In this document: piece after piece, positions 17,457-63,901 of the stretch
How the letters are laid out: each line of letters begins with the position of its first letter
Numbering within the stretch: position 1 is the first letter of the stretch
IMG/VR virus record: IMGVR_UViG_3300024259_002152
Location: 124,001-188,000 of that record
Direction: 5' to 3' (one strand)
Length of the DNA: 64,000 nt
Notes under the pieces: model-generated
Database searches by the model: none
The model's input: the letters and a program-made list of their open reading frames with translations, nothing else
Told to the model about the DNA's origin: nothing
Translations under genes and position numbers: made by a program

Positions 17457-18019
17457 AAGAAAAAACAATTATAATTAAAGATGGTGTAAAATTAGATTTA
17501 TCAACTCTTAGCGAAGAGTGGATAGATGAAGAGATATTGGGAAAAGAAATGCAATATATATCTAGAATGACAGAAGGATTAACAACAGGAACCATGTCTA
17601 GTGATAAGGAATATATCCTTTTAAAAAATAAGGTTGTTGATGAAATGATCAAAAATAAAGTTGTATCCCTAAAAAAGGAATTATGTGAGGCAGCGAAGAA
17701 AAAAACTGACATTTATGACCAAGCGGATATGATTCAGGCGCAAGCCCTCCAGAGGATTCAGGATAATGCAAGAGCAGTAGCTAGAGAGAATGATAGGGAG
17801 ATGCCTATAGATAAATTAAAGGATATCGTAACAAAATACAACCTAAAAGATCCTGCCCTTGATTGCATAGCTGATCATCCCAACATCGAGAAAGTAGCAG
17901 GAAAGGTGCAGAAAAAGACGATAAAAAAGAAGAAAGTTAAGAAAAAAATACTTAAGAAAAAAATAGCTAGGAAAAAAATAGTTAAGAAAAAGGTTACTAA
18001 GAAACGTGATAGGCGATAA
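17453..18019 (+). CDS. hypothetical protein with histone H1-like pentapeptide tail
   Basis: KKTIK-KKKVK-KKILK-KKIAR-KKIVK-KKVTK. Confidence 0.7.
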   Translation: MKEKTIIIKDGVKLDLSTLSEEWIDEEILGKEMQYISRMTEGLTTGTMSSDKEYILLKNKVVDEMIKNKVVSLKKELCEAAKKKTDIYDQADMIQAQALQRIQDNARAVARENDREMPIDKLKDIVTKYNLKDPALDCIADHPNIEKVAGKVQKKTIKKKKVKKKILKKKIARKKIVKKKVTKKRDRR

Positions 18020-18737
18020 AAAGATATTAACTATAGTTACGGCTCGTGGTGGGTCGAAAGGAATTCCAGGGAAAAATTACCGAGATTTATGTGGATATCC
18101 TTTATTCATGTGGTCCATGTTGGCTTCTTTAGAATCAAAATATATTGATGCTACTATTTTATCTTCTAATTGTGATGAGTGTTTGAGAATTTGTGAGCAA
18201 TGTGCAGGAGAGGTAGATAAAGATAAGACATATGGTTGGATTGTAAGACCAGACGAATATGCTACAGATCTTTCTAAGAATGAAGATGCTCTTATTCATG
18301 CTCTGAAATTTCTTAATGAAGAATATGATGTTGTTATAAATTTACAACCTACCTCTCCTTGCAGATTGGATGGATTGTTAGATAGAAGTATCGAAGCATA
18401 TTATAAAGGAGGATATGACAGTTTATTGACCGCTGGTAAAGATACTCCTTTTATATGGCAAAAAATAGATGAAAAATGGGAATATACTGTTGATAAGAAT
18501 CCTTCTTGTGAAAGGAAGATGAGGCAAGAGTTCGATGAAAATGAATTTATCTTTCATGACAACGGCAACATTTACCTAGTAGAAAGTGAAATTTTACTTG
18601 ACACAGAATGTAGAATAGGGTATAACCCATGTGTTGTAGAGACAAGTGGTATAAATAATATCCAAATTGACCAAGAGTTTGATTTTCTTTTAATCTCTAA
18701 ACTATTGGAATCAATGAAGTTAGAAAGACCAATATGA
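18006..18737 (+). CDS. acylneuraminate cytidylyltransferase (NeuA family) #1
   Basis: TARGGSKGIPGKN, LQPTSP and NGNIY motifs. Confidence 0.9.
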   Translation: MIGDKKILTIVTARGGSKGIPGKNYRDLCGYPLFMWSMLASLESKYIDATILSSNCDECLRICEQCAGEVDKDKTYGWIVRPDEYATDLSKNEDALIHALKFLNEEYDVVINLQPTSPCRLDGLLDRSIEAYYKGGYDSLLTAGKDTPFIWQKIDEKWEYTVDKNPSCERKMRQEFDENEFIFHDNGNIYLVESEILLDTECRIGYNPCVVETSGINNIQIDQEFDFLLISKLLESMKLERPI

Positions 18738-18801
18738 TGAAAATAAAGGAATTGATTATCTTTTTACAGAACGTTATTGTAGTTTTGTAAAGGAGATAAA
18801 T

Positions 18802-19725
18802 ATGAATAAATATTTTTGGACAGAAGAGGAGATAAATGTTGTTAGAAATACGGATTTAACTTTATCTGAAATGATGGGATTACTTCCTAATAGAACTTAT
18901 TCTGGCATTAGAGGGCAAATTAAAAAACAAGGGATATCATTAAGTAAAGAATCTATTTCAAAGGCACACACCTTGGGCCATCTAGGTATTAAAGAAGCTG
19001 ATATTGATAAAATCTTAGCAGATTCTAATTTTTTAGATATAATAAATGGTAATCTGTTGGGCGATGCATGGATAGATAAGTCTCATAACTTTGGATTGGC
19101 GAATATTAGTAAAGAATTTGTAGAACATGTTAATGTAGAACTTAATCGAATTTTTAAAAGTAATTCTAAAGTTTGTGTTAAATTGTCAAATGAGGGAAAG
19201 ATAAATGGGAAAAGATTCAAGAGAAAAAAACAATATTATATGAGTAAATCTTGTAAGCCAATTTTTCGTAATTTGTATTATCAATGGTATGAGAATGGGG
19301 AGAAAATAGTTCCAGACGAATTAGATCTTACTCCCATGTGCTGTTATTTTTGGTATATAGGAGATGGTTGTATAAATTGTAAAGAGAAAAGACAAAGCGC
19401 TTCAATATCTCTTTCCACAAATGCTTTCTCTAAAAGATGTGTGGAGAAGCTTCTTAATAAAATGCAGGATAAAATTAATGGATTTAATGCGTCTGTCCAT
19501 TTTTTGAAAGATAAACCAGTTATTTTTATTAGCGGTCGATTTGTTTTGAAATTTCTAGATTATATCGGTGATGGATTTTTAAAATCATTTTCTTATAAGT
19601 GGAATTTAAATGGTTATTCTGAACAAAAGACCGTCTGTAAGGTTTGTAATAAGGAATTTGTCCACTACGGTTTTAAGAAAAATTATAGAACTCAATGCAG
19701 TGTTTGTAGAAAGAAATTAAAATGA
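18802..19725 (+). CDS. free-standing double-motif LAGLIDADG homing endonuclease
   Basis: IINGNLLGDAWI and YFWYIGDG motifs, LSTNAFS, C-terminal CxxC...CxxC. Confidence 0.85.
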   Translation: MNKYFWTEEEINVVRNTDLTLSEMMGLLPNRTYSGIRGQIKKQGISLSKESISKAHTLGHLGIKEADIDKILADSNFLDIINGNLLGDAWIDKSHNFGLANISKEFVEHVNVELNRIFKSNSKVCVKLSNEGKINGKRFKRKKQYYMSKSCKPIFRNLYYQWYENGEKIVPDELDLTPMCCYFWYIGDGCINCKEKRQSASISLSTNAFSKRCVEKLLNKMQDKINGFNASVHFLKDKPVIFISGRFVLKFLDYIGDGFLKSFSYKWNLNGYSEQKTVCKVCNKEFVHYGFKKNYRTQCSVCRKKLK

Positions 19726-22400: not shown

Positions 22401-22556
22401 GTGAAAAAACCCATTAATATGAAGATGGATGTGGAGATTGTTAAGAAATGTAAAAAAATAGCTAAAGAGAATAAGAAGACATTTACTCAGTTGGTTACCG
22501 ATGTTTTATTTGAATATATTAAGAATTATAAAAAGGAGAGTTCAAATGGAATATAA
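22401..22556 (+). CDS. small ribbon-helix-helix protein (51 aa, not in the ORF track)
   Basis: GGAG RBS plus GTG; MKKPINMKMDVEIVKKCKKIAKENKKTFTQLVTDVLFEYIKNY; overlaps the NeuB start. Confidence 0.65.
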   Translation: MKKPINMKMDVEIVKKCKKIAKENKKTFTQLVTDVLFEYIKNYKKESSNGI

Positions 22557-23409
22557 GAAATGTAAAGTTGTTAGTGAGTTATGTTGTAATCATGGGGGAG
22601 ACATTGATATGGCAAAAGAAATGATAATATCATCCAAATTGTGCGGGGCAGATTATGTCAAGTTCCAAAAGAGAAATCCTATTAAGGCGGTGCCTATAAA
22701 AATGCATAATCAGTCTCATCCATGTCCTATACATTCATTTGGAGAAACTTATTTAGAGCATAGGAAAAATTTAGAATTTACAATAGATCAGCATAGGCAT
22801 TTAAAAAGATATTGTGAAGAAGTTGGTATAGGGTATTCTTCTTCTGTATGGGATGAAGATTCTGCATTTGATATTATATCTTTAAATCCTGATTTTATAA
22901 AAGTTCCTTCTGCAATGAATGAAAATTATTTTTTATTGGATACTATTTTTAATAACTACAAAAGAGATGTTCATGTATCACTAGGCATGATAGGGAAAAA
23001 AGAGAAAGAAGAGTTATTCGAGTATCTTAAAGATAAAAAAAATAGGGTGGTAATATATCAAACTACTTCTTCTTATCCTGTTAAATTTGAAGAGTTGTAT
23101 TTAATGGAAATTGTCGAGTTAAAAAAGAATTTTAAAAAAGTGGGTTATAGCGGTCATCATCTTGGAATAGCAGTTGATATAAGTGCTTATACTCTTGGCG
23201 CCGAGTGGATAGAAAGGCATTTTACTTTGGATAGAACGGCAAAAGGAACTGATAATTCTGCTAGTTTAGAACTATCTGGGTTGCAAAAATTATGTAGAGA
23301 TTTAAAAGCCTGTTATAAGTCATTGGATTATAAAAAAATAGATTTTACTTTTGATGAAGAAAAAAATAGAAATAAATTAAAAATAAAAAGGGGGAGAAAT
23401 GATATCTAA
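22546..23409 (+). CDS. N-acetylneuraminate synthase (NeuB) family #1, no SAF domain
   Basis: SELCCNHGGD, YVKFQKR, SSYP, GYSGHH and IERHFT motifs; ATG at 22546 after AAGGAG. Confidence 0.9.
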   Translation: MEYKKCKVVSELCCNHGGDIDMAKEMIISSKLCGADYVKFQKRNPIKAVPIKMHNQSHPCPIHSFGETYLEHRKNLEFTIDQHRHLKRYCEEVGIGYSSSVWDEDSAFDIISLNPDFIKVPSAMNENYFLLDTIFNNYKRDVHVSLGMIGKKEKEELFEYLKDKKNRVVIYQTTSSYPVKFEELYLMEIVELKKNFKKVGYSGHHLGIAVDISAYTLGAEWIERHFTLDRTAKGTDNSASLELSGLQKLCRDLKACYKSLDYKKIDFTFDEEKNRNKLKIKRGRNDI

Positions 23410-23932
23410 AGAGGCTAAGAGAGATTACGATAAAGAATATCGTAAGAAAAACAAGGAAAAGGCACAAAAGTTTCAGCAAGAATATTATCAAACGAATAAA
23501 GAAAAAATAAAGGCAAGAATTAAGAAATATAGGATAGAGCATCCAGAAAAAGAAAATAAGGATAAAAGAAAAGCTAGAAGCAAAAGATATAGAGATAATA
23601 ATCCAATAAAAAGCCGCTTGTCTGTTTGGAAAAGTCGGGGCATAAAAATAACGGTTGAAGATTACAAAAAGATTTATAAAGATCAAGAAGGGTGTTGTTA
23701 TATTTGTGGTGTTCCAGAGGAAAAATTGAAAAATAAATTATGTCTAGATCACAATCATAAAACAGGGAATCCAAGGGGTTTACTTTGTCACAAATGTAAC
23801 TCTATGATAGGTTTTATTGAAAGGGGATATGAAGTAGATTTTAGAGATCCGATACCTATATTAAAAAATGCTATTTCTTATATCTCTAACAAACTGGACG
23901 TATCGGCAAAAAAAGTGAAAAATATGATTTGA
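23399..23932 (+). CDS. endonuclease VII-family (His-Me finger) homing endonuclease
   Basis: Q...CYICG...LCLDHNHKTGNPRGLLCHKCNSMIG; basic N-terminus. Confidence 0.88.
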   Translation: MISKEAKRDYDKEYRKKNKEKAQKFQQEYYQTNKEKIKARIKKYRIEHPEKENKDKRKARSKRYRDNNPIKSRLSVWKSRGIKITVEDYKKIYKDQEGCCYICGVPEEKLKNKLCLDHNHKTGNPRGLLCHKCNSMIGFIERGYEVDFRDPIPILKNAISYISNKLDVSAKKVKNMI

Positions 23933-24010: not shown

Positions 24011-24595
24011 ATGAAATTTAGTGATATAAAAGTTGTCGTAACTGATGTAGACGGCTGTTTAACAGATGGTCATTATGTTATAACTTCGGCATTTGAGGAT
24101 GCGAACTCTCTAATGCAGAGAATCCCCTATGTATCGAAATCTTTTCATACGAGGGATTTTGATGGTCTTGAAAGAACGATGAAGACAGGTATTAGAGTGA
24201 TCATTATAAGTCAATCAAAGGATTCAGTTATTGCTGAACAAATTAATAGATTGACTATGAGGTCAGATTCTTTTTGGAGTGATTGTTATAAGAATGGTTT
24301 TTTACGACTATTAAGAGGAGTAGAGGATAAGAAGCAAGAGTTAGATAAATATTTGGCTGAAGAAAAAATATCTTGGGATAATGTTGCTTATTTCGGTGAT
24401 GCAGAAAATGATTTGGAGAGTATAGAGCAGTCATTATATGCGGGTTGTCCTAATGATGCTGTCGATATTATTAAGAAAAATTGTAATTATTGGTCTTCAT
24501 CTCCAGGGGGCAGAGGAGTGGTTTATGATTTTTGTATGTTTATATTAAGACAAATAGAAACGGAGCGGAGTAAGAATGAAAATTTTAGAGCCTAA
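24011..24595 (+). CDS. KdsC-like HAD phosphatase
   Basis: DVDGCLTDG, KSFHTRD, YFGDAEND and GGRG motifs. Confidence 0.88.
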   Translation: MKFSDIKVVVTDVDGCLTDGHYVITSAFEDANSLMQRIPYVSKSFHTRDFDGLERTMKTGIRVIIISQSKDSVIAEQINRLTMRSDSFWSDCYKNGFLRLLRGVEDKKQELDKYLAEEKISWDNVAYFGDAENDLESIEQSLYAGCPNDAVDIIKKNCNYWSSSPGGRGVVYDFCMFILRQIETERSKNENFRA

Positions 24596-29423: not shown

Positions 29424-29424
29424 T

Positions 29425-30851: not shown

Positions 30852-30858
30852 GAAATAT

Positions 30859-32527: not shown

Positions 32528-32534
32528 GATAAAT

Positions 32535-36569: not shown

Positions 36570-36580
36570 GGATCAGAACA

Positions 36581-38555: not shown

Positions 38556-38557
38556 AA

Positions 38558-39232: not shown

Positions 39233-39234
39233 AT

Positions 39235-52271: not shown

Positions 52272-52278
52272 TGTAAAT

Positions 52279-54498: not shown

Positions 54499-54499
54499 T

Positions 54500-55306
54500 A
54501 TGAGTAAATACTATTATTTAACTGCCGTTTCTGGCGAAGAGTTTATAAACAAATTTACTAAGTATTCTGTGAAATCTTTATTAAGAGCAGGAATTAATCC
54601 TTCTGATATATATGTGGCTGTTAATGATAAGAAGGATAAAAATCTCATTAAAAATGTTCTTCCAGAGATAAAAAATATACGCGTGATTAATGAGGATTTG
54701 AGTGCTGTTGTCTGGAAATATTCAAAAGGAAGAAGAAAATACTCTTTATTTAAAAGCGCATCTTTGTACAAAACATTTCCTGAACCCCTTGGTGATAGGT
54801 ATATGATATATTTTGATGGAGATGTGCTATGGTATAAAAATCCATCTTCTTTTTTTGACGCAAAATGTGATAAAACTTGGTTTCATCACGGCAAAGATCT
54901 GGCAGAAAGATCCAAGTTTCAAAAAAGTCAGATTGACGTTAAAGATATAGACTCTTTAAAACAATGGTGTAGTGAACCACAAGCACATCTAATGGTTAAA
55001 CATGGATGTAAGATTCTTCCAGATAGAGAAGTTGTAGCAGGTTTATACCTTCTTCATCCTAGAGACCACGCTGCTGTGCTAAAATTAACTTATGAAGGGT
55101 GTTTGGAAAATTCTACAAAATTTAAGAAACATGAGGGAGGGGGAGATCAAAAGCCAATGAATGCCGCACTGAGTATACTGGAAGTAGATTGGCATGGAGG
55201 ATCCAGATTTTTCTGTCCAGAACATAAGGAGTATTTTGACCATTACTTTGGTAAGGATAATATGAAACAACAATTTTGGGACAGATCGAAAGAGATGGGG
55301 TTGTAG
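54500..55306 (+). CDS. putative GT-A glycosyltransferase (GT8/GT77-like)
   Basis: YFDGDV, AGL and GDQ...N motifs. Confidence 0.55.
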   Translation: MSKYYYLTAVSGEEFINKFTKYSVKSLLRAGINPSDIYVAVNDKKDKNLIKNVLPEIKNIRVINEDLSAVVWKYSKGRRKYSLFKSASLYKTFPEPLGDRYMIYFDGDVLWYKNPSSFFDAKCDKTWFHHGKDLAERSKFQKSQIDVKDIDSLKQWCSEPQAHLMVKHGCKILPDREVVAGLYLLHPRDHAAVLKLTYEGCLENSTKFKKHEGGGDQKPMNAALSILEVDWHGGSRFFCPEHKEYFDHYFGKDNMKQQFWDRSKEMGL

Positions 55307-55307
55307 T

Positions 55308-55802
55308 ATGGAAATTTTAACTCCTGTTATTGGCGTTCCAAATAGTGTTTGGAAGAAAAAAGCAATTAAATTTGTTAGAAAAAGTGAGAACATATATTAT
55401 TTAGATGTTCGTGATTTTTGTTATAAGTGTGATAGGTATATGGACTTATTGAAAATGTTCGATAATAATGATGAGAATTATAAAAAAAGCGACTATTTTG
55501 TTGATCGTTTATCAAGGGGAGGTAAATCAAAAAGACTTATTATTCGTAGGATTAATAATTATAGAAAAATGTATGAAGCTATTAAGAGTGGTGATTATGA
55601 TTGTCTAAAAACTAATTGCCCTATAGTGACTGTTGATGGCTGTCGATTAGATGGCACTCATAGATTATCAATTTTAATCTATTTGGGAATATGTAAAACA
55701 AATATTAATGTTGTCGTTTATGAGAAAATATTTTCAAATAAAAATGCAAAAACTATTAAAAGAAACAATCTAGAATATAGACAAAAAACGTATAATTTGT
55801 AA
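55308..55802 (+). CDS. ParB/Srx-like domain protein
   Basis: PIVTVDGCRLDGTHRLSIL. Confidence 0.6.
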   Translation: MEILTPVIGVPNSVWKKKAIKFVRKSENIYYLDVRDFCYKCDRYMDLLKMFDNNDENYKKSDYFVDRLSRGGKSKRLIIRRINNYRKMYEAIKSGDYDCLKTNCPIVTVDGCRLDGTHRLSILIYLGICKTNINVVVYEKIFSNKNAKTIKRNNLEYRQKTYNL

Positions 55803-55803
55803 A

Positions 55804-56715
55804 ATGAAAATACTAATTCTTATAGATAAAATTAATTGGGCATATCATAGTATAGCTAAATCTTTGTTGAAATATAGTAATTGTGATATTTTGGATATGG
55901 ATATTTTACCCATTAAGGCAGGAGTTAATAAGATAAAAAAAGTATATAAAAAATATGATTTTTTTTATGTTATGGGATTTCAAACTTATGAAAAAGTAGA
56001 TTTTTTACCAAAGAAAATAACTAGTGTTGGGATACACTCGTGCCAAGCTTGGGATAATAAAAAGACAAAACCAGGTAAGAAAATAATGCCTGATAAAACG
56101 GTTATTAAATTTTTAAATGGTTTTTGTAGGGTAAATGCTGTCTCTAAATATTTGTATGATATTTTTAATGAGTCAGGAGTTTCTGATCTATCTTATACTC
56201 CTAATGGTGTTGATACAAAGATTTTTCAACCATCTGATAGAAATAATCATAATGATTTTGTAGTTGGATTTTCAGGAGTTGGTAATGAATTGAAAGGCAT
56301 AGATAAATTTATAATACCATCCATAAATAATGTTAAAGCTAAGCCGTGTTTTGCTATTCGTAAAACGGATAAGTATGTTCCTCTTAAGGAGATGCCAACT
56401 TTTTACAATAAATTAGATGTTTACGTTTGCGCTTCTTCTTCTGAAGGGATGTCTTTGAGCGTTTTGGAGGCAGCATCTTGCGGGGTTCCTGTTGTTTCAA
56501 CTAGGGTTAGCGGTTGTACCGAGATAATAGAAGATGGCCAAAATGGTTTTTTTGTTGATAGAAGCGTAGAAGATATCTCTAAAAAAATATCTCTTATTAA
56601 AAATAGTGTAAATTTAAAGAATAAGATGAGTAAAAACATTAGAAATAGTATAATAGCACATCATTGCTGGAGCAAACAAATAGATAAATGGACTAAATTT
56701 TTAAGTGGAGGATAG
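55804..56715 (+). CDS. GT4-family glycosyltransferase
   Basis: PNGVD, KG and EGMSLSVLEAASCG motifs. Confidence 0.88.
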   Translation: MKILILIDKINWAYHSIAKSLLKYSNCDILDMDILPIKAGVNKIKKVYKKYDFFYVMGFQTYEKVDFLPKKITSVGIHSCQAWDNKKTKPGKKIMPDKTVIKFLNGFCRVNAVSKYLYDIFNESGVSDLSYTPNGVDTKIFQPSDRNNHNDFVVGFSGVGNELKGIDKFIIPSINNVKAKPCFAIRKTDKYVPLKEMPTFYNKLDVYVCASSSEGMSLSVLEAASCGVPVVSTRVSGCTEIIEDGQNGFFVDRSVEDISKKISLIKNSVNLKNKMSKNIRNSIIAHHCWSKQIDKWTKFLSGG

Positions 56716-56718
56716 ATT

Positions 56719-57354
56719 TTGAAAGATCGTCATGTTATTATTATTGGAGCAGGACACACTATAAAACAATATAAAAATCAGATTTTAAAATACATTGAAA
56801 AGAATAGTGCTTTAACAATTGGTATTAATATGATGACATCTTTATGTGTACCTAATTATCATTTGTGGACTAATAAACAAAGATACAAGACACAATATCA
56901 TTGCATAGATAAGAAATCAAAGTTATTGTTTGGAAATAGTTTATCAGATAAACTTGTAAGAAAATACTGGGAAGGCGATTTTGAAAGAATTAATCATATT
57001 AATGATAAATCTGCTGCTATTTCATATAATAAAGGTGTTATACGCGGAAATTTTAGAACGGCTGGAATTTTAGCTATTATGATTGCCCATGTGAGAGGGG
57101 CCAATAAAATTGATGTTGTAGGAATGGATGGATTTACTTTGTATAATAAAAAGGACGTCATCAAAAAGAGAGCCAATCAACATTGTTACGGGAAGGGGCA
57201 TACTGATGATGCTAGTTGGGAAGAGTGTTTGGAAAAGGATAGGTTAGTTGATGATGGTTTACATGCTCTAAAAGATTACGGAGTTGAATTCGAGATTATT
57301 ACTCCAACCAAATTTAAAGATTTTTGTAATCTCTCTGTTTTGGATAACGTATGA
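56719..57354 (+). CDS. DUF115/Maf/MptE-like protein
   Basis: IIGAG, IGIN and TAGILAI...VVGMDG motifs. Confidence 0.6.
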   Translation: MKDRHVIIIGAGHTIKQYKNQILKYIEKNSALTIGINMMTSLCVPNYHLWTNKQRYKTQYHCIDKKSKLLFGNSLSDKLVRKYWEGDFERINHINDKSAAISYNKGVIRGNFRTAGILAIMIAHVRGANKIDVVGMDGFTLYNKKDVIKKRANQHCYGKGHTDDASWEECLEKDRLVDDGLHALKDYGVEFEIITPTKFKDFCNLSVLDNV

Positions 57355-58001: not shown

Positions 58002-58592
58002 ATGTCAAAAAACAGTTTAATAAAATATATTAGAAAATATGATCTAGAATTATTGATGTTGAAAAATGTTAAATTGGAAGAAACTTGTATGCAATATAGA
58101 CCAGAATCTTTATTCTATGACCTAATGAGAGATAAAAATGGAATAATTGATTTAACTATGAAAAATTCACCCCATCGCGAATTTGCATTTTTATACTATA
58201 GAAAAGGGTTGAAATGGCTCACGAAAAATTTTAAAAATACAAAGTACTGTCAATTTAAAAGTAAAATATTAAATAGAGATATTAATGTTCCTATGAGAAA
58301 AATTAGGTTATTTGATTCTTTAAAAAAAGGATATCTCTCGAAAGGATTTGAAAAAGATTACATCGTCTTATTAGAAAGACCTTTAGTAGAAACTAGATAT
58401 GGAGTTAAATGTAGTGAGTATTCATGTCCAGAAGTTTTTATGGGCCATCATAGAATCGGAGCTTTATTGAGTTGCGGAGTTAAGAAGGCGGACGTTATTA
58501 TAGCTAGAGATATTGCTTCCGATAGTAGGCAATGTTTTGGAAAAATACATAATATTTATAAATTATTGAGTAATAATGAATCAGTTAATTAA
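58002..58592 (+). CDS. ParB/Srx-like domain protein
   Basis: DSLKKGY...EVFMGHHRIGAL. Confidence 0.5.
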   Translation: MSKNSLIKYIRKYDLELLMLKNVKLEETCMQYRPESLFYDLMRDKNGIIDLTMKNSPHREFAFLYYRKGLKWLTKNFKNTKYCQFKSKILNRDINVPMRKIRLFDSLKKGYLSKGFEKDYIVLLERPLVETRYGVKCSEYSCPEVFMGHHRIGALLSCGVKKADVIIARDIASDSRQCFGKIHNIYKLLSNNESVN

Positions 58593-60144
58593 AAAATATC
58601 ATATCAAAAATGATGAATTATCTAAAAATGTTGTTATAATATGTTGCCCATGGTTGTTTCAAAATCAGGTAGAATTTAAGTCTCAGAATTTGGGTCTTGC
58701 TTATGTCGGTAATTTTATAAAAGAATGTGGACATAATATTCTCAAATATATAGATCCGATGATGTTTGGTGGAGAAGATGTTAAACAGAAGATAGAATGT
58801 AACAATTATAATATATATAGATTTGGTCATGGCGATGAATGGATTATCGATAAAATTCCAGATAATGTTGATTATATTTTTATTAATGCTCCATTTACAG
58901 ATTCTCGTTTAGCTTTATATCCTCTATGTAATAAAATTAAAAAAGTTATGCCTCATATCAGAATAGTAATAGGTGGCATATTGGCAACTTCATCTCCTCT
59001 AGAAGTTATAAGGAATTGTGGCATTGATATTGTCGTCAAAGGGGAGGGAGAAATAGCTTCTGCCAGGATATTAAGAGAAGATAATTTATCAGAAATACCA
59101 GGTATAGCATATAAGATAGGAATAGACGTAGTTGAAAATGACGGGCTGGCAGAAAAAGTTTATGATATAAATTGTCTTCCTGGTTTATCTGATGTATCGT
59201 TTATCCCTATAGGGGAATATATTAAATGGTCTCCCAGGGGCAACAGGGCGGATATTACATTGTCCTATATTACTTCTAGAGGGTGTCCTTTTAGTTGTAA
59301 TTTTTGTTCTGTTCCGACAAATAAGCAAGCGTTAAGAGAGCTTGATACCGATAGGGTTATTCATGAAATAGATTTTTTTATTGATGAATATAAAATAAAT
59401 CATTTGGAAATAGAGGATGATAATTTTACATTTAATCATGATCATTCTCGTCCTATTGTAAACCATATAGCCGAATTAAGAGAAAATGGTGTTGATATAT
59501 CTTTATCATTTCCTAATGGGGTCATGATTTATTCTTTGGATAAAGATGATATATTGGGGTTTAAGAAAGCTGGGGTTGAAATTGTTTATTTGCCAGTTGA
59601 ATCTGGTGATATTAAAAATTTGATACTCATGAATAAACCTTATGCTTTTGAGCATCTGGATAAATCGTTAGAAGTGGCTAGATGGTGTAAGGAAGTGGGC
59701 ATAGAATCAGGGGCATTTTTTATTATAGGTTATCCAGGTGGAAGAGTTAAGAGTTTTAAATATAGGGATTTTATTTTAAGTCACTATAAAAATGACATAA
59801 TTGATTATAATGATGATTCTTTATTGGTTATGGGGGAGGATCAAAAATCGTTTGAAAAAACTTTTCAATTTATGAAAAAGATAAAGGCTCAGGGAGTTTC
59901 ATTTATAACTCCTTTAATTGCAACTCCCTATCCTTCCACGAATTTGTATAATGTATGTAGTGAAAATTCTTGGTTTAGACATGAGGATGATATAAATCGT
60001 ATAGTAACTATTTCTTATCAAGATTTAAAAGAAGAATTCATTAATATCTCAACCCCATGGTGCTCAAATTCCGATATATATGATAGATGGCAGATGGTTA
60101 GAGATAATTTTGATATTAAAAACAATGTCATAAAAGAAAAATAA
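58576..60144 (+). CDS. cobalamin-binding radical SAM enzyme
   Basis: LGLAY, GG, GEGE, TSRGCPFSCNFC and EDDNF motifs. Confidence 0.9.
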   Translation: MNQLIKKYHIKNDELSKNVVIICCPWLFQNQVEFKSQNLGLAYVGNFIKECGHNILKYIDPMMFGGEDVKQKIECNNYNIYRFGHGDEWIIDKIPDNVDYIFINAPFTDSRLALYPLCNKIKKVMPHIRIVIGGILATSSPLEVIRNCGIDIVVKGEGEIASARILREDNLSEIPGIAYKIGIDVVENDGLAEKVYDINCLPGLSDVSFIPIGEYIKWSPRGNRADITLSYITSRGCPFSCNFCSVPTNKQALRELDTDRVIHEIDFFIDEYKINHLEIEDDNFTFNHDHSRPIVNHIAELRENGVDISLSFPNGVMIYSLDKDDILGFKKAGVEIVYLPVESGDIKNLILMNKPYAFEHLDKSLEVARWCKEVGIESGAFFIIGYPGGRVKSFKYRDFILSHYKNDIIDYNDDSLLVMGEDQKSFEKTFQFMKKIKAQGVSFITPLIATPYPSTNLYNVCSENSWFRHEDDINRIVTISYQDLKEEFINISTPWCSNSDIYDRWQMVRDNFDIKNNVIKEK

Positions 60145-60172: not shown

Positions 60173-61159
60173 ATGAATACAAAAGTTATTGCTGAGATCG
60201 GTGTTAATCATAATGGAGATTATGAGTTATCTAGAAAAATGCTTAAATCAGCCAGTGAGAGCGGTGCTAATATCGTTAAATTTCAAACCCACATAGCAGA
60301 TAAAGAAATGATAGGTGATATAGGAAAATATGCCACTATATTTCCTACCATTTACGATCATATAGATAATTTGAGTTTATCTTTTGATGAAATGAAAAAT
60401 CTCAAAACTTACTCGGATGAATTAGGAGTAGAATTTTTATCAACTCCGTTTAGCGTAGAGGCTGTAGATTGGTTAGAGGATATAGGGGTTAATGCTTATA
60501 AGATAGGATCTGGAGAAACTGATGATTTTCTTTTATTAGAAAGAATATGTAGAACTGGTAAACTTATTCTTATATCTACAGGTATGAGTTCTATGGAAGA
60601 AGTAAATAAAATGGTACATTTTTTAAATAGTATGAATGCTAATTTTATTTTAATGCAATGTACTTCTCATTATCCTGCTTCTTATGATGTTATTAATTTG
60701 AAGGTTCTTGATGTGTATAGAAAAGAATTTAATTGTAATGTAGGGTTGTCTGATCATAGTCCTAGTATTTATACCTCATTAGCTGCTGTTGCTATGGGCG
60801 CAATCGTTGTGGAAAAACACTTTACCATAGATAAAAGTTTACCTGGCACAGATCAAGAAGGATCTATTTTACCAAACGAATTAAAAGAGATGGTGAAAGC
60901 CATAAAAATAGTAGAAGAATGTATGGGCGATGGAAATAAAAATTCCGTTATTATTGATGAAAATGTTATGAAATTATTTAAACATGGAATAGTCGCTAAA
61001 AAGGATTTGGCTAAAGGGGATGTGATAGGAGTAGAGGATATAGCAAGTAAAAGGCCTTTAGTTGGAATTCCTTCATGTGAATATCAGAATGTGATAGGAA
61101 AGAGTATTAAAAATAGTATTCTAAGAGATAGTCCAATTTTATTCGAAGATATATCATAG
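60173..61159 (+). CDS. NeuB family synthase #3 with SAF domain
   Basis: IAEIGVNHNG, STPF, KIGSGE, SDHS, EKHFT and C-terminal KRP motifs; start could instead be 60158 or 60167. Confidence 0.92.
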   Translation: MNTKVIAEIGVNHNGDYELSRKMLKSASESGANIVKFQTHIADKEMIGDIGKYATIFPTIYDHIDNLSLSFDEMKNLKTYSDELGVEFLSTPFSVEAVDWLEDIGVNAYKIGSGETDDFLLLERICRTGKLILISTGMSSMEEVNKMVHFLNSMNANFILMQCTSHYPASYDVINLKVLDVYRKEFNCNVGLSDHSPSIYTSLAAVAMGAIVVEKHFTIDKSLPGTDQEGSILPNELKEMVKAIKIVEECMGDGNKNSVIIDENVMKLFKHGIVAKKDLAKGDVIGVEDIASKRPLVGIPSCEYQNVIGKSIKNSILRDSPILFEDIS

Positions 61160-61170: not shown

Positions 61171-62115
61171 ATGGATGATTATTATTCTACATTTGATGAT
61201 AAAAGAATAACTCATATCATTGATATGATTAGAAAGATCCAGAAAATTGACACGGTAAATTTCACTGAATTAGATTTAACGAAATACAAAAAAGACATAT
61301 CGTATTTATATCCTATACATAATTTTTACAGGTTTATATACCCCATACTTCTAAGAAATAAAATGGAAGATATTGGCATAGGTGATAAAATAAAAGATCC
61401 AGTTGAGAAAATTTATGGTGAGGGGCGAGAATTTAGTATTTTTGAGTCTCATCATATAAATTTAGATACGGGTTTCTTTATTAATCAATTTATTAAGGAT
61501 AATAATGTTAAAACTATTTTAAACTGCGGCACGGGTTCGGGATCTAGCGTAGCGTATGCTCAGATGGGATTGAAAGATGTTCATGTTACAACGATTGATC
61601 ATATGCAAGAATTTTCTAGGATATCTAAATTTATAATAGATATTTTAAGAGATATTGGATTTCCTTTGGGCGATGATATTAATTATATAGATGTTGATTT
61701 ATGTGAGTTAAAAGATACAGATTGTCAACATGGGTATGAATCTTTTTTATTCACAAATAGATTTAGAAAAGTTTATAAAAAACATCATTCCCTTATATCT
61801 TATGATATAAATTTTGAAAATAAATTCGATATGATAATACTTGACGGTCCGTCGTTTTTTAGATTTCCTACTTTATTGAAAGCTGTTAATTTTTTGAATA
61901 ACGATGGTTATATTCTATTTGAATATTGCAGACAAGAAATAAGAATAATAAAAAAACTTAAGATAAATATATTGGAAGAAAAAGGGAGAAGTATGGATAA
62001 ATCAATAAAGATTAGGTCGAAGGGTGACGAGTTGGTTAGAGCTTTTACTGTTATCAGGGGAGAAGATTTTAAAAAGGTTATAGAACCATTCATAAAGGTG
62101 CGAAATGATATTTAA
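61171..62115 (+). CDS. putative class I SAM methyltransferase
   Basis: ILNCGTGSGS and IILDGP motifs. Confidence 0.65.
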   Translation: MDDYYSTFDDKRITHIIDMIRKIQKIDTVNFTELDLTKYKKDISYLYPIHNFYRFIYPILLRNKMEDIGIGDKIKDPVEKIYGEGREFSIFESHHINLDTGFFINQFIKDNNVKTILNCGTGSGSSVAYAQMGLKDVHVTTIDHMQEFSRISKFIIDILRDIGFPLGDDINYIDVDLCELKDTDCQHGYESFLFTNRFRKVYKKHHSLISYDINFENKFDMIILDGPSFFRFPTLLKAVNFLNNDGYILFEYCRQEIRIIKKLKINILEEKGRSMDKSIKIRSKGDELVRAFTVIRGEDFKKVIEPFIKVRNDI

Positions 62116-63238
62116 AAAAATATGTTATATTACTTCCAGCCGTTCTGATTATGCTAAAGTAAAAAATCTTCTAAAACAAATAAACGAGGACGATGAGTTT
62201 GAGCTGTACATAATAGCCACTAGCGCTCAAATTAAACAAAGATTTGGAGATGGTGTTCAAGAATTAATTGATGATGGTTTAACAATACATAAAAGAGTTG
62301 ATTGTATGGTTGAGGGAGACAATAGGCTTGCAATGTTAAAATCATCAGCCATGGAAATATATGAATTAACGAATATTATAGATGAATTAAAACCTGATCT
62401 TGGCCTAGTAGTTGGAGATCGTTTTGATATGTTGACTTCTGTATATGTTCTTTCTATGATGAATATACCAATTGCCCATATACAGGGGGGAGAAAAAACA
62501 GGAACGATAGATGATGTTATAAGGGATGTTATGACCAAATTTGCTCATATCCATTTTGTTTCAAATGAAGATGCTAGGCAAAGAGTTGAGTCTTTATCGG
62601 AAGATAGACAATACATTTATAATGTCGGTTGTCCTAGCTTTGATTATATAAAAAGTTTAGATATACCTGACGATATTGATTATAATATTTTATTGCCTTT
62701 TTGTAAAGACGATATTGATATTAGTAAAAAAGATGATTATTTTATTGTAATCGTACACCCAAACGTGGCGATAGAAGAAGATATAGATATGAAAATAATC
62801 TTAGATGCATTAGATAATTTTGAGAATAAAAAAGCTATTTTTTATCCAAATACAGATCCATTTCATCAAAAGATTATTAATGCTATTAATAGAAAACACG
62901 ATTATATGAAATTTAAACATATCTCTATGGAATGTTTTATGATGTTACTTAAACATTGCAAATGTATGATTGGTAATTCAAGTAGTGGTATCCGAGAAAC
63001 GTGTTTTTTTGGTGTTCCAACAGTTAATATAGGTAGAAGGCAAGAAGGTAGACTGAGTGGAAAGAATGTAGTTAATGTTAAATGCTCTGAGGACGACATC
63101 GTTAGTGGAATAAAATCAGTTTATAATAAAACTTTTGAGCCAGAATATCTTTATGGTAATGGGGCTTCAAGTGATAAGATTGTGGATATTTTGAAATCTT
63201 ATGATAATTTTGAATATAAAAATATATGTATTAAATAA
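62105..63238 (+). CDS. neuC: hydrolysing UDP-GlcNAc 2-epimerase
   Basis: SRSDY, GDRFD, HIQGGE, GNSSSG and RQEGR motifs. Confidence 0.9.
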   Translation: MIFKKICYITSSRSDYAKVKNLLKQINEDDEFELYIIATSAQIKQRFGDGVQELIDDGLTIHKRVDCMVEGDNRLAMLKSSAMEIYELTNIIDELKPDLGLVVGDRFDMLTSVYVLSMMNIPIAHIQGGEKTGTIDDVIRDVMTKFAHIHFVSNEDARQRVESLSEDRQYIYNVGCPSFDYIKSLDIPDDIDYNILLPFCKDDIDISKKDDYFIVIVHPNVAIEEDIDMKIILDALDNFENKKAIFYPNTDPFHQKIINAINRKHDYMKFKHISMECFMMLLKHCKCMIGNSSSGIRETCFFGVPTVNIGRRQEGRLSGKNVVNVKCSEDDIVSGIKSVYNKTFEPEYLYGNGASSDKIVDILKSYDNFEYKNICIK

Positions 63239-63901
63239 ATGAAAACACTGGCAATATATTTAAATGTTAGAAAAAATAGTTCTAGATGCAAAAATAAACT
63301 TCTTAAATTTTTTGCAGGAACATGTTTGTTCGATATCGCCTTAAAGAAGCTAGAACAAGTGAGGTCGGATGAAAAATTTGTTTGTGCTTATGATAGAGAG
63401 TTTTTTGAATATCAACATAATTCTTCTATTAAACATTATGTTAGAAGTAAAGAATCTGTATCTATTGATGGGCCATTAACAAAAGTATTTGAATGTTATA
63501 ATTCTTTTCAGTCTGACTATGTTATGTTTCTCAATCCTTCTCATGCCCATTTAAGAGTAGATACGATACAATCTGCTGTAGATTTTTTTAAAGCATCTAA
63601 TTATGAGTCCATGACATCTGTAGAAAAGATTAATGACTGGATATTTGATAATGATGGGAAGTTATTATATCCTTCTGATTTGGCCCATGGAGATACTAAA
63701 AGAACAGATCCTTCATATAGGGCTGCACATGCTTTTCATATATATAGTAGAAAAAGATTTATAGATAATAATGGATTGATATGGCCATGGCTGAAAAATG
63801 ATCCTCATTTATTTGAAATATCAAAGATAGAATCTTTGGATGTTGATGATGAGGTTGATTTTAAAATTAGTGAGTCTGTATACCTAGCGCATCTCGATTA
63901 A
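63239..63901 (+). CDS. cytidylyltransferase (NeuA-like) #3, divergent
   Basis: RKNSSRCKNK, NPS and SLDVDD motifs. Confidence 0.75.
   Translation: MKTLAIYLNVRKNSSRCKNKLLKFFAGTCLFDIALKKLEQVRSDEKFVCAYDREFFEYQHNSSIKHYVRSKESVSIDGPLTKVFECYNSFQSDYVMFLNPSHAHLRVDTIQSAVDFFKASNYESMTSVEKINDWIFDNDGKLLYPSDLAHGDTKRTDPSYRAAHAFHIYSRKRFIDNNGLIWPWLKNDPHLFEISKIESLDVDDEVDFKISESVYLAHLD

What the first reader, a model, noticed from the sequence alone, without database searches (positions are those of the whole stretch)
18006..63901. Three parallel nonulosonic-acid (sialic-acid-like) pathways
Seen: three divergent NeuB-family synthases (22546, 48006, 60173) and three NeuA-family cytidylyltransferases (18006, 44877, 63239). 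Only the third set has NeuC and a SAF domain. NeuB #2 has an atypical ELGWNW where ExGxNH is usual, and lies about 4-5 kb from a 2-hydroxyacid dehydrogenase and NeuA #2. Inference: up to three different ulosonic acids are made, one possibly a novel sugar.
Basis: partly seen in the sequence, partly recalled or inferred. Interest (0 to 1): 0.68.

Follow-up and report, generated by a model that had tools for sequence, protein, structure and literature searches.

The report
Megaphage with three sialic-acid-like sugar pathways
An uncultivated giant bacteriophage carries three unrelated gene sets for making sialic-acid-like sugars inside a very large sugar-coat gene island; one set, common in wild T4-like phages, has no studied counterpart and may make an unknown sugar.

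Summary
The window holds three NeuB-family synthases and three cytidylyltransferase-like genes at the stated coordinates. Only set 3 has a SAF domain and a NeuC. Corrections:
- The genome is an IMG/VR virus record (351 kb, about 73% complete), a huge phage.
- 'NeuA #3' is a very divergent cytidylyltransferase.
- A fourth, KdsB-type (CMP-Kdo synthetase-like) gene lies 1.3 kb past the window end.

The three synthases fall in three deeply separated clades (AU test rejects one clade, p = 6e-6). Each sits in its own conserved module.
- **Module 1** (NeuA, SAF-less NeuB, KdsC-type HAD phosphatase, DUF115/Maf-like proteins, no NeuC) matches the 9-phosphate route. Its cellular orthologues sit beside equivalog-grade KDN-9-P phosphatases, so KDN is the likely product.
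- **Module 2** (D-2-hydroxyacid dehydrogenase, NeuA, SAF-less NeuB, GT2) recurs in 47 of 50 related viral loci. It occurs once as a NeuA-dehydrogenase fusion, also lies in T4-like phages, and has no characterised member. This genome's NeuB2 carries unique active-site substitutions.
- **Module 3** (B12-radical SAM, NeuB+SAF, methyltransferase-like, NeuC, two cytidylyltransferases) is the canonical Neu5Ac-type route.

No aminotransferase is encoded, so de novo Pse/Leg synthesis is unlikely. Products are inferred, not shown.

The parts
9364..10077 (+). DUF115/MptE-like (Maf-type) protein, candidate nonulosonic-acid transferase
   Evidence: PF01973 46.3 bits, over the cut-off. PHROG 4603 'alpha-2,3-sialyltransferase', E 5e-9.
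16130..16849 (+). DUF115/MptE-like (Maf-type) protein of module 1
   Evidence: PF01973 31.7-32.9 bits, below the cut-off. The same position is kept in the syntenic 548-kb relative L009. Homologues lie within 6 kb of NeuB1-type genes in 19 of 63 viral loci.
18006..18737 (+). NeuA1, CMP-nonulosonate synthetase of module 1
   Evidence: PF02348 56.9 bits. Best solved relative is mouse CMP-Neu5Ac synthetase 1QWJ, 77.3 bits over residues 8-228.
18802..19725 (+). LAGLIDADG homing endonuclease lying between module-1 genes (mobile element, not a pathway enzyme)
   Evidence: PF03161 72.7 bits.
22546..23409 (+). NeuB1, SAF-less synthase of the 9-phosphate (KDN-9-P type) clade
   Evidence: PF03102 198.6 bits. 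The called gene is 287 aa. It lies in a clade of 23 rows, SH-aLRT 99, with Bacteroidota and other cellular proteins. It shows no deviation at 90 family-conserved columns.
23399..23932 (+). Endonuclease VII-like nuclease next to NeuB1 (probable homing endonuclease)
   Evidence: PF02945 69.8 bits. The same neighbour is present in L009.
24011..24595 (+). KdsC/KDN-9-P-phosphatase-like HAD hydrolase of module 1
   Evidence: Best NCBIfam hits are NF058599 (KDN-9-P phosphatase, 65.6 bits) and KdsC (63.1 bits), both below their cut-offs. The N-terminal DxDG..TDG motif is present. HAD homologues lie beside 66 of 80 cellular NeuB1-type genes.
27474..42275 (+). First part of the glycan island: GT4+GT2 fusion, several GT2/GT4, methyltransferases, GDP-mannose 4,6-dehydratase, an epimerase/reductase and unknowns
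   Evidence: Pfam. GMD at 32881-33876 scores 465.7 bits.
42272..43261 (+). Virus-specific GT2-fold glycosyltransferase that opens module 2
   Evidence: Atlas features score 0.99; TM 0.61-0.64 to bacterial GT2. The cluster is present in 30 of 53 loci.
43261..44223 (+). D-isomer 2-hydroxyacid dehydrogenase of module 2
   Evidence: PF02826 155.5 bits. Present in 47 of 50 NeuB2-type viral loci. Fused to NeuA in L076. No deviation at 38 conserved columns.
44223..44864 (+). FkbM-type methyltransferase
   Evidence: PF05050 61.7 bits. The cluster is present in 22 loci.
44877..45566 (+). NeuA2, CMP-nonulosonate synthetase of module 2
   Evidence: PF02348 83.7 bits. Best solved relative is Vibrio cholerae CMP-Neu5Ac synthetase 6IFD, 97.9 bits. 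No deviation at 42 conserved columns.
45576..47318 (+). Two NodZ-like (fucosyltransferase-like) proteins
   Evidence: Weak PF05830 hits, 22.3 and 15.4 bits, both below the cut-off.
48006..48797 (+). NeuB2, SAF-less synthase of a virus-enriched clade, with a remodelled active site
   Evidence: PF03102 173 bits. Clade of 16 rows, SH-aLRT 99. H14W, S87A, F89Y, S130A, T131V and R215K against family consensus.
48788..49444 (+). GT2 glycosyltransferase immediately downstream of NeuB2
   Evidence: PF00535 43.3 bits. A GT2 holds this position in 43 of 53 loci.
49432..50190 (+). Weak DUF115/MptE-like protein
   Evidence: PF01973 24.7 and 23.2 bits, below the cut-off.
50177..56715 (+). Further methyltransferases, GT4 glycosyltransferases and unknowns of the island
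   Evidence: Pfam.
56719..57354 (+). Faint DUF115/MptE-like protein of module 3
   Evidence: PF01973 14.3 bits. 48% identical to the 218-aa protein of the syntenic module in L239.
58576..60144 (+). B12-binding radical SAM enzyme directly upstream of NeuB3
   Evidence: PF04055 60.2 and PF02310 43.8 bits. The same neighbour is found in two related contigs, at 52% identity in L239.
60173..61159 (+). NeuB3, canonical synthase with SAF domain
   Evidence: PF03102 253.2 and PF08666 39.2 bits. TIGR03569 328.9 bits, cut-off 399.65. 178 bits to N. meningitidis NeuB with the Arg314 equivalent kept.
61171..62115 (+). O-methyltransferase-like protein between NeuB3 and NeuC
   Evidence: No Pfam hit. Atlas features 0.94 to Methyltransf_24 clusters; TM 0.5-0.56. 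A protein of about 317 aa holds this position in relatives.
62105..63238 (+). NeuC-type hydrolysing UDP-GlcNAc 2-epimerase
   Evidence: TIGR03568 352.4 bits, over the cut-off of 235.9. It is the only one in the genome.
63239..63901 (+).
   Evidence: PF02348 23.9 bits. No PDB hit at E <= 1. 55% identical to L239's 218-aa protein, which has a CTP_transf_3 hit and scores 36.7 bits on PseF.

Best explanation
The window is part of a huge uncultivated bacteriophage genome, in which roughly a fifth of the assembled sequence is a glycan-biosynthesis island. Inside and just upstream of the island lie three independent modules. Each is predicted to make and CMP-activate a different 2-keto-3-deoxy (ulosonic) acid sugar from host metabolites.

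**Module 1 (about 9.3-24.6 kb).** A SAF-less NeuB condenses PEP with a hexose 6-phosphate, most likely mannose-6-P. A KdsC-type HAD phosphatase removes the 9-phosphate. NeuA1 then makes the CMP-sugar, so the product is KDN-type.

**Module 2 (42.3-50.2 kb).** A second SAF-less NeuB works with a D-2-hydroxyacid dehydrogenase and NeuA2 to make an uncharacterised CMP-ulosonic acid. The flanking GT2-fold transferases would use it.

**Module 3 (56.7 kb to 2 kb beyond the window).** NeuC turns UDP-GlcNAc into ManNAc. NeuB3, with its SAF domain, makes a Neu5Ac-type acid. This acid may be methylated by the adjacent methyltransferase-like protein and/or B12-radical-SAM protein. It is activated by one of two cytidylyltransferases.

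DUF115/Maf-like proteins near each module are candidates for transferring these sugars to a phage or host surface molecule.

**Shown:** gene content, family membership, clade separation, conserved modules and residue conservation.

**Inferred:** the substrates, the products, the role of the dehydrogenase and the acceptor.
For: **Virus.**
- G000 is an IMG/VR record of 350,866 bp, about 73% complete.
- 343 of 372 ORFs are on one strand.
- It carries an intein-bearing helicase, a phage-type DNA polymerase, LAGLIDADG and EndoVII nucleases and an Apyc1-like protein.

**Three clades.** Tree; AU test.

**Module 1.**
- It is syntenic in a 548-kb relative.
- A NeuB1-type gene is found in 63 IMG/VR loci and in at least 596 stretches of cellular genomes, mostly Bacteroidota.
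- Of 80 cellular loci, 76 have NeuA, 66 have the HAD and 1 has NeuC. The HAD is mostly fused to or abutting NeuA.
- The HADs beside these synthases in three Bacteroidales genomes pass the KDN-9-P phosphatase equivalog model: 181-191 bits against a cut-off of 180.
- KDN-9-P synthase plus phosphatase is the characterised route in B. thetaiotaomicron and Prymnesium (PMC6200933).

**Module 2.**
- The order dehydrogenase-NeuA-(methyltransferase)-NeuB2-GT2 is conserved.
- The dehydrogenase is present in 47 of 50 loci and NeuC in 2 of 50.
- There is one natural 557-aa NeuA~dehydrogenase fusion.
- The cassette also occurs in T4-like phages.

**Module 3.**
- It is conserved in three other contigs.
- NeuC passes its equivalog cut-off.
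- NeuB3 keeps the Arg314 equivalent.

**No route to Pse/Leg precursors.** No DegT-type aminotransferase is found in the genome.

**Transferase candidates.** Six DUF115/MptE-like hits.
Against: - No chemistry has been measured.
- All three NeuBs score below the NCBIfam equivalog cut-offs for Neu5Ac synthase and PseI.
- The phage's own HAD scores only 65.6 bits on the KDN-9-P phosphatase model, against a cut-off of 180.
- I could not obtain characterised BT1714, LegI or human NANS sequences. The KDN assignment therefore rests on neighbourhood, and Neu5Ac against Leg for NeuB3 rests on missing precursor genes in a genome that is only about 73% complete.
- NeuB2 of this genome has lost two Ser residues and a Thr that the family conserves. 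Two of the changed positions match T110 and F112 of the N. meningitidis enzyme, which are listed as key active-site residues. Its terminal branch is 0.29, against 0.10-0.12 in its closest kin. It may be impaired.
- The role of the dehydrogenase is unknown.
- The host and the acceptor are unknown.
Confidence: 0.6

Rival explanations
1. Only two pathways work. In this genome NeuB2 is a decaying or inactive copy, and the dehydrogenase and NeuA2 serve another synthase's product.
For: - NeuB2 alone deviates from its family: S87A, F89Y and S130A are unique among 117 homologues. T131V, R215K and others add up to 8 of 84 conserved columns.
- Positions 87 and 89 align with T110 and F112 of N. meningitidis NeuB, which are listed as key active-site residues.
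- Its terminal branch is about 2.5-3 times that of its nearest kin.
Against: - The ORF is intact and full length.
- The metal ligands and the E/K/Q/K core are kept.
- The changes cluster in the active site and include a hydroxyl swap (Ser to Ala beside Phe to Tyr). This looks more like remodelling than random decay.
- Its partners, the dehydrogenase and NeuA2, show no deviation at any conserved column.
- Other megaphage copies (L075, L078, L079) are similarly divergent overall.
Confidence: 0.2
2. The three synthases are redundant. They have different origins but make the same or nearly the same sugar (for example KDN/Neu5Ac), which gives robustness across hosts.
For: - NeuB-family enzymes can be promiscuous. 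KDN-9-P synthases were tested on alternative sugars (PMC6200933).
- All three score best on the same NCBIfam model, TIGR03569.
Against: - The clades are deeply separated.
- The accessory sets are mutually exclusive: a phosphatase without NeuC, a dehydrogenase without NeuC or phosphatase, and NeuC plus a SAF domain.
- There is a separate cytidylyltransferase and separate transferase candidates for each module.
Confidence: 0.12
3. NeuB2-type enzymes are not nonulosonic-acid synthases. With the 2-hydroxyacid dehydrogenase they make a shorter or dicarboxylic 2-keto-3-deoxy acid (a Kdo-like or ulosaric acid), or a reduced acyclic acid that NeuA2 activates.
For: - The module has no hexose-precursor enzyme (NeuC in 2 of 50 loci, no phosphatase).
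- The family lacks the SAF domain, whose Arg314 binds the sugar.
- D-2-hydroxyacid dehydrogenases act next to a carboxylate (family knowledge).
- The NeuA~dehydrogenase fusion suggests the dehydrogenase acts on the acid sugar itself.
- A KdsB-type cytidylyltransferase is present without any KdsA in the genome.
Against: - NeuA2's closest solved relatives are CMP-Neu5Ac synthetases (97.9 bits), not KdsB (about 32 bits).
- The KdsB-type gene belongs to conserved module 3, not module 2.
- There is no direct evidence on chain length.
Confidence: 0.25

Closest known systems
KDN pathway of Bacteroides thetaiotaomicron (BT1714 KDN-9-P synthase, BT1713 KDN-9-P phosphatase) and Prymnesium parvum
   Same: Module 1 has the same three activities: a NeuB-family synthase, a C0-type HAD phosphatase and a CMP-synthetase, with no NeuC. 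Its cellular orthologues sit beside phosphatases that pass the BT1713-based equivalog model (PMC6200933).
   Different: - It is phage-encoded.
- The genes are separated by homing endonucleases and counter-defence genes.
- The phosphatase is free-standing and divergent (65.6 bits).
- The product is untested.
- Direct comparison with BT1714 was not possible.
Bacterial Neu5Ac pathway NeuC-NeuB-NeuA (E. coli K1, Neisseria meningitidis)
   Same: Module 3 has a NeuC that passes the equivalog cut-off. Its NeuB has a SAF domain and the Arg314, His215, His236 and Glu25 equivalents.
   Different: - NeuB3 is below the equivalog cut-off (328.9 against 399.65).
- It groups with environmental archaeal and bacterial proteins, not with E. 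coli K1 NeuB.
- The module adds a B12-radical SAM enzyme, a methyltransferase-like protein, a barely recognisable cytidylyltransferase and a KdsB-type one.
Flagellin glycosylation islands of Campylobacter, Helicobacter and Aeromonas (Pse/Leg synthesis plus Maf/DUF115 proteins)
   Same: Several NeuB/NeuA sets lie next to multiple DUF115/MptE-like proteins in one island.
   Different: - The genome has no PseB/C/H/G or LegB/C/H-type enzymes and no aminotransferase at all.
- No flagellin is present.
- The acceptor is unknown.
- It is encoded by a virus.
Virus-encoded glycosylation machineries (giant eukaryotic viruses; glycosylated mycobacteriophage virions)
   Same: A virus carries its own sugar-nucleotide synthesis and many glycosyltransferases. 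This comparison rests on my own knowledge and on the citations seen.
   Different: - Here the host is a prokaryote.
- The sugars are CMP-activated ulosonic acids.
- Among 50,697 deposited phage records, each of the three NeuB proteins matched only the same 3 records, at 24-34% identity.

Membership tests
NeuB family (Pfam PF03102), PEP-dependent ulosonic acid synthases | Profile match over the whole TIM-barrel domain, above the gathering score | tested here: met
   198.6, 173.0 and 253.2 bits against a cut-off of 22.1, covering profile positions 1-2 to 235-241 of 241.
NeuB family | Catalytic and metal residues (N. meningitidis numbering: E25, K53, Q55, K129, S132, H215, E234, H236) | tested here: met
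   All are invariant in the three-way alignment, with numbering derived from the 1XUU alignments. Exceptions: the whole NeuB1 family lacks the E134 equivalent (motif PSAMN). NeuB2 has Ala at the T110 and S154 equivalents.
N-acetylneuraminate synthase equivalog (NCBIfam TIGR03569) | Score at or above the curated cut-off of 399.65 bits | tested here: not met
   NeuB3 scores 328.9, NeuB1 172.9 and NeuB2 166.0 bits.
Pseudaminic acid synthase PseI (NCBIfam TIGR03586) | Score at or above 340.25 bits, and PseB/C/H/G-type precursor genes | tested here: not met
   Scores are 243.8, 128.6 and 126.5 bits. There is no DegT aminotransferase in the genome. The PseI references form a separate clade.
Legionaminic acid synthase LegI | Grouping with characterised LegI, and LegB/LegC/LegH precursor genes | tested here: inconclusive
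   No characterised LegI sequence could be fetched. The precursor aminotransferase is absent from the 351 kb, but the genome is only about 73% complete.
KDN-9-phosphate synthase type (BT1714-like) | Synthase coupled to a KDN-9-P phosphatase and a CMP-synthetase, without NeuC | tested here: met
   In the window: NeuA1, NeuB1 and a KdsC-like HAD lie within 6.6 kb. In 80 cellular loci of the same clade: NeuA in 76, HAD in 66, NeuC in 1. Three Bacteroidales HADs pass NF058599.
KDN-9-phosphate synthase type (BT1714-like) | Sequence orthology to BT1714, and activity on mannose-6-P | not testable with these tools
Enzyme activity needs an assay.
KDN-9-P phosphatase equivalog (NCBIfam NF058599) | Score at or above 180 bits | tested here: not met
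   The window HAD scores 65.6 bits. It works like a KdsC/KDN-9-P phosphatase (DxDG motif) but is not an equivalog member.
Hydrolysing UDP-GlcNAc 2-epimerase NeuC (NCBIfam TIGR03568) | Score at or above 235.9 bits | tested here: met
   352.4 bits over positions 1-365 of 365.
CMP-nonulosonate synthetase (CTP_transf_3, NeuA type) | Profile match and full-length similarity to solved CMP-Neu5Ac synthetases | tested here: met
   NeuA1 scores 77.3 bits to 1QWJ. NeuA2 scores 97.9 bits to 6IFD. For the 63239 ORF the result is marginal only: 23.9 bits on Pfam and no PDB hit.
CMP-Kdo synthetase KdsB (NCBIfam NF003952 / TIGR00466) | Score over the cut-off; KdsA and KdsC partners present | tested here: inconclusive
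   The gene just outside the window scores 228.7 bits on NF003952 (cut-off 193) and 155.0 on TIGR00466 (cut-off 155.2). No KdsA (PF00793) is found in the genome.

The most novel reading that the evidence does not exclude
The cassette of NeuB2, D-2-hydroxyacid dehydrogenase, NeuA and GT2 makes a so far undescribed CMP-activated ulosonic acid that phages use to decorate their virions or their host's envelope. The cassette matched 365 IMG/VR stretches, and the dehydrogenase is present in 47 of the 50 close loci examined. It occurs in T4-like phages as well as megaphages. It was not found in 401 sampled Bacteroidota genomes. Each of the three NeuB proteins matched only the same three of 50,697 deposited phage records, at 24-34% identity. 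This megaphage combines that sugar with KDN-type and Neu5Ac-type sugars, and perhaps a fourth Kdo-type activation, to build a virus-made acidic glycan.
Probability: 0.3. Interest if true: 0.8.

Novelty: new variant of a known kind. Interest (0 to 1): 0.62.

Why it matters
Sialic-acid-like sugars are best known as surface decorations of bacteria and animals that govern recognition by immune systems, lectins and phages. Here a phage carries its own, apparently threefold, capacity to make them, within an island of more than a dozen glycosyltransferases and about eight methyltransferase-like genes.

Three things follow if the reading is right:
- Some huge phages would build complex acidic glycans themselves, as giant eukaryotic viruses do. 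That bears on virion stability, receptor masking, superinfection exclusion and marine carbon chemistry.
- The dehydrogenase-coupled cassette is a concrete, cloneable candidate for a new sugar pathway, and it is widespread in uncultivated T4-like phages.
- The SAF-less NeuB1 clade can now be linked by neighbourhood to the KDN-9-P route across Bacteroidota and other phyla. This helps annotation.

Tried and rejected
- Megablast of window 1-25000 against GenBank phages gave no match.
- T4 gp23 and NCLDV capsid profiles were not found in G000. No control genome rang either, so this says little. The lineage stays unassigned; moraphages (PMC12619734) reach only 307 kb and were not shown to be related.
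- The CST-I sialyltransferase profile gave no hit.
- KdsA was not found and DegT aminotransferase was not found.
- I looked for characterised reference sequences. E. coli K1 NeuB was obtained. PseI was obtained with its operon context in B. thuringiensis. An A. baumannii synthase without a NeuC neighbour was obtained.
- No characterised LegI, BT1714 or eukaryotic NANS could be fetched. Neu5Ac against Leg for NeuB3, and direct orthology of NeuB1 to BT1714, stay open.
- The Azospirillum gene annotated 'neuB' sits with a formyltransferase and an aminotransferase, so I did not use it as a Neu5Ac reference.
- The PDB search with the dehydrogenase gave only generic D-LDH, PGDH and glyoxylate reductase hits. 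It gives no clue to the substrate.
- Literature searches found no description of phage nonulosonic-acid pathways or of the dehydrogenase-coupled cassette. One KDN query returned nothing.
- One search failed because a locus cannot be a search centre; searches replaced it.
- I considered that the Trp in ELGWNW marks a dead enzyme. I rejected this because that position varies (H, F, W, Y, A) across the family.
- I considered a cellular island mis-called as viral. I rejected this on strand bias, homing endonucleases, an intein, phage DNA polymerase and synteny with other IMG/VR megaphage contigs.
- No reads tools, complex prediction, structure prediction or alternative genetic codes were used.

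Full report
**What the sequence is.** All sizeable ORFs of the window run on the + strand. G+C is about 31% and GC skew is about +0.3 throughout. The window is bases 124001-188000 of a single 350,866-bp contig. The genome tool identifies it as an IMG/VR virus record, linear, with CheckV completeness about 73%. Of its 372 ORFs of at least 100 aa, 343 are on one strand.

Viral character is supported by several genes:
- an intein-containing UvrD-type helicase;
- a LAGLIDADG and an endonuclease-VII-type nuclease, an Apyc1-like anti-Pycsar metallo-beta-lactamase, a NADAR protein, a peptide deformylase and a DUF1257 pair;
- a phage-type DNA polymerase, a tape-measure-like protein and a tRNA nucleotidyltransferase.

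Many of the largest ORFs have no PHROG match, and megablast finds nothing among deposited phages. This is therefore a poorly known lineage of huge phages. A 548-kb IMG/VR contig is syntenic with window 16-27 kb.

**Check of the observation.** It also confirms a SAF domain only on the third NeuB, a NeuC-type epimerase only beside the third, and a D-2-hydroxyacid dehydrogenase upstream of the second. Genome-wide there are exactly three NeuB genes and one Epimerase_2.

There are, however, four CTP_transf_3 genes. The strongest lies 1.3 kb beyond the window (G000:189311-190078 = L001:2311-3078). It is KdsB-type: 113 bits to solved CMP-Kdo synthetases, and 228.7 bits on NF003952 against a cut-off of 193.

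It is nevertheless a conserved member of the module. A 55%-identical protein holds the same position in a related contig and carries a CTP_transf_3 hit.

The ELGWNW motif is real. In the 120 nearest homologues that position reads H 77, F 16, W 9, Y 1, A 1, with no motif match in 16.

**Are the three synthases different?** I built a maximum-likelihood tree of 76 proteins. It held the three window proteins, samples of their homologue sets, E. coli K1 NeuB, a B. thuringiensis PseI taken from a pseC-pseG-pseH-pseI operon, an A. baumannii capsule-locus synthase, named cellular homologues and other viral NeuBs. The results:
- NeuB1 falls in a clade of 23 rows (SH-aLRT 99).
- NeuB2 falls in a clade of 16 rows (SH-aLRT 99).
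- NeuB3 falls inside the SAF-bearing group, in a 19-row clade (SH-aLRT 100) with Nitrosopumilus, Omnitrophota and similar environmental proteins.
- NeuB3 is apart from both E. coli K1 NeuB and the PseI pair.

Forcing the three window proteins into one clade costs 597 log-likelihood units (p-AU 6e-6).

On NCBIfam all three score below the equivalog cut-offs for Neu5Ac synthase and PseI, with NeuB3 closest at 328.9 against 399.65.

**Are any of them dead?** All three keep the equivalents of N. meningitidis E25, K53, Q55, K129, S132, H215, E234 and H236 (numbering read off the 1XUU alignments). NeuB3 also keeps the SAF-domain Arg314.

I compared each protein with about 117-119 homologues at columns conserved in at least 90% of them:
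- NeuB1 deviates at 0 of 90 columns.
- NeuB3 deviates at 3 of 56 columns, all mild.
- NeuB2 deviates at 3 of 70 columns: S87A, F89Y and S130A. The other 117 sequences have Ser (116), Phe (117) and Ser (117) there.

Against 41 viral family members NeuB2 also shows T131V, R215K and three more changes. Positions 87 and 89 align with T110 and F112 of the meningococcal enzyme, which a docking study lists among key active-site residues. Position 130 aligns with S154 of the STG motif.

NeuB2's terminal branch is 0.29, against 0.10-0.12 for its closest kin. Its partners, the dehydrogenase and NeuA2, deviate at none of their conserved columns.

I read this as an active site remodelled in this lineage. 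Loss of function cannot be excluded and is kept as a rival explanation.

**Module 1, the 9-phosphate route.** Its parts are:
- NeuA1 (18006), whose best solved relative is mouse CMP-Neu5Ac synthetase;
- SAF-less NeuB1 (22546);
- a KdsC-like HAD (24011), with a DxDG..TDG motif and best NCBIfam hit KDN-9-P phosphatase, below the cut-off;
- DUF115/MptE-like proteins at 9364 and 16130.

These lie within 15 kb, interleaved with homing endonucleases and counter-defence-like genes. The same order recurs in the 548-kb relative.

NeuB1-type genes occur in 63 IMG/VR loci, a dozen of them on contigs over 200 kb. They also occur in at least 596 stretches of cellular genomes. The best 80 are mostly Bacteroidota, with Nitrosospira, Planctomycetota and Verrucomicrobiota.

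In those 80 cellular loci, 76 have a NeuA-like gene, 66 have the HAD and only 1 has NeuC. The HAD is usually fused to or directly follows NeuA, giving proteins of 381-394 aa. In three Bacteroidales genomes the HAD passes the equivalog model built for the B. thetaiotaomicron KDN-9-P phosphatase, at 181.3-190.8 bits against a cut-off of 180.

KDN-9-P synthase plus phosphatase plus CMP-KDN synthetase is the characterised route in B. thetaiotaomicron and Prymnesium parvum (PMC6200933). Mannose-6-P is a universal metabolite, and nothing here could supply ManNAc-6-P. KDN is therefore the most likely product. This is an inference.

**Module 2, the dehydrogenase-coupled cassette.** NeuB2-type proteins are about 262-270 aa and lack SAF. 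They carry family signatures KFQTW, GPWD.DGRR and LPGRDN. A viral-collection scan found 365 matching stretches.

In the 50 loci at 42% identity or more, 47 have the dehydrogenase, 42 have a NeuA and 2 have NeuC. The order is almost invariant: GT2-like, dehydrogenase, NeuA, an optional methyltransferase, NeuB2, GT2. In one 461-kb contig NeuA and the dehydrogenase are a single 557-aa protein with no stop.

Five 100-175-kb contigs with the cassette all encode a T4 gp23-type capsid protein. The cassette is thus a common accessory of uncultivated T4-like phages as well as megaphages.

In 401 sampled Bacteroidota genomes the family profile found only SAF-bearing proteins, at 197 bits or less. Each of the three NeuB proteins matched only the same three of 50,697 deposited phage records, at 24-34% identity.

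The dehydrogenase resembles generic D-lactate, phosphoglycerate and glyoxylate dehydrogenases, so its substrate is open. The fusion suggests it acts on the acid sugar or its direct precursor. I found no literature on this cassette.

**Module 3, the canonical route with extras.** The gene order is: B12-binding radical SAM enzyme, NeuB3 with SAF, a methyltransferase-like protein of about 315 aa, NeuC, the divergent cytidylyltransferase, a minus-strand DUF115-like gene, a 254-aa unknown and the KdsB-type cytidylyltransferase. Most of this order is kept in a 28-kb contig and an 84-kb contig, and part of it in a 473-kb contig.

The genome encodes no DegT-type aminotransferase, so the diamino precursors of Pse and Leg cannot be made by the phage as assembled. 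UDP-GlcNAc to ManNAc to a Neu5Ac-type acid is the simplest reading. The methyltransferase-like and radical-SAM neighbours suggest a methylated derivative; that is a lead only.

No KdsA is present. The KdsB-type enzyme may therefore use host Kdo or another acid. In relatives it sits beside an HpcH/HpaI aldolase or is fused to an HMGL-like domain. This hints at a pyruvate-aldolase route that is absent here.

**The island and its use.** From 27.5 kb to beyond the window end, and for at least 10 kb further, the genes are glycosyltransferases, methyltransferases and sugar-modifying enzymes. These include GT2, GT4 and NodZ-like transferases, methyltransferases, GDP-mannose 4,6-dehydratase and an epimerase/reductase, a second dehydratase, a second 2-hydroxyacid dehydrogenase and a TPP-dependent E1 pair.

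Composition is uniform, so the island is not a recent import. Six DUF115/MptE-like hits lie near the modules. They are candidate transferases by analogy with Maf proteins; that analogy rests on my own knowledge.

Whether the acceptor is a virion protein, a host envelope glycan or something else cannot be told from sequence.

**Verdict.** There are three evolutionarily independent ulosonic-acid modules, probably giving KDN-type, unknown and Neu5Ac-type CMP-sugars, plus a fourth Kdo-type activating enzyme, all in a huge phage. The pathways are variants of a known kind. The phage setting, their co-occurrence and the dehydrogenase-coupled cassette are the new elements.

Noticed in passing
G000:189311-190078 (L001:2311-3078), 1.3 kb past the window end: A fourth cytidylyltransferase of KdsB (CMP-Kdo synthetase) type: 228.7 bits on NF003952 and 113 bits to solved KdsB. 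It is a conserved member of module 3, 59% identical in L239. The genome has no KdsA.
   Followed up: yes
L239:10782-11567, and an 84-kb ENA contig: In relatives the KdsB-type cytidylyltransferase sits next to an HpcH/HpaI aldolase, or is fused to an HMGL-like domain (588 aa). This suggests a pyruvate-aldolase route to another CMP-activated acid sugar. No such aldolase is found in G000.
   Followed up: partly
L076:3559-5232 (IMGVR_UViG_3300037247_001786, 461 kb): A natural fusion of a NeuA-type cytidylyltransferase (aa 10-239) with the D-2-hydroxyacid dehydrogenase (aa 242-550).
   Followed up: yes
window 3991-6972: A 993-aa UvrD-type helicase that matches SPO1-like phage helicases in two pieces, where those records annotate an intein. 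It is probably intein-containing.
   Followed up: partly
window 18802-19725 and 23399-23932: A LAGLIDADG endonuclease and an endonuclease-VII-like nuclease sit directly beside NeuA1 and NeuB1. The EndoVII-like gene keeps this place in the 548-kb relative. They are probably free-standing homing endonucleases that target conserved genes.
   Followed up: partly
window 19722-22298: An Apyc1-like anti-Pycsar metallo-beta-lactamase (58.4 bits, cut-off 50), a NADAR domain protein and a cREC_REC receiver. Together they form a likely counter-defence cluster lying between NeuA1 and NeuB1. The cluster is also present in L009.
   Followed up: no
window 24877-26536: Two DUF1257 proteins followed by a peptide deformylase, then a radical SAM protein at 26540. 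The trio is conserved in L009.
   Followed up: no
window 12685-13800: A 371-aa protein that hits several PHROGs of unknown function through multiple repeated stretches. It may be a repeat-rich structural or fibre protein.
   Followed up: no
L001:6643-10602 (G000:193643-197602): A second 2-hydroxyacid dehydrogenase, a second NDP-sugar 4,6-dehydratase and a TPP-dependent E1 alpha/beta pair. They suggest branched or otherwise modified deoxysugars in the same island.
   Followed up: no
G000:203052-204116 and 207136-208098: Two further weak homologues (about 23% identity) of the B12-binding radical SAM enzyme that precedes NeuB3.
   Followed up: no
L005:13423-14604 (TARA scaffold, 487 kb): A RuBisCO-large-like protein (393 aa) sits inside a glycan cluster that also holds the NeuA-dehydrogenase-NeuB2-GT2 cassette, a sulfotransferase and a UDP-glucose dehydrogenase.
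   Followed up: no
L206, L166, L172, L202, L219, L193, L226, L173, L008: In most cellular NeuB1-type clusters the cytidylyltransferase and the KdsC-like phosphatase are one 381-394-aa protein. This is the same two-domain layout as animal CMP-sialic acid synthetases (that comparison rests on my own knowledge).
   Followed up: partly
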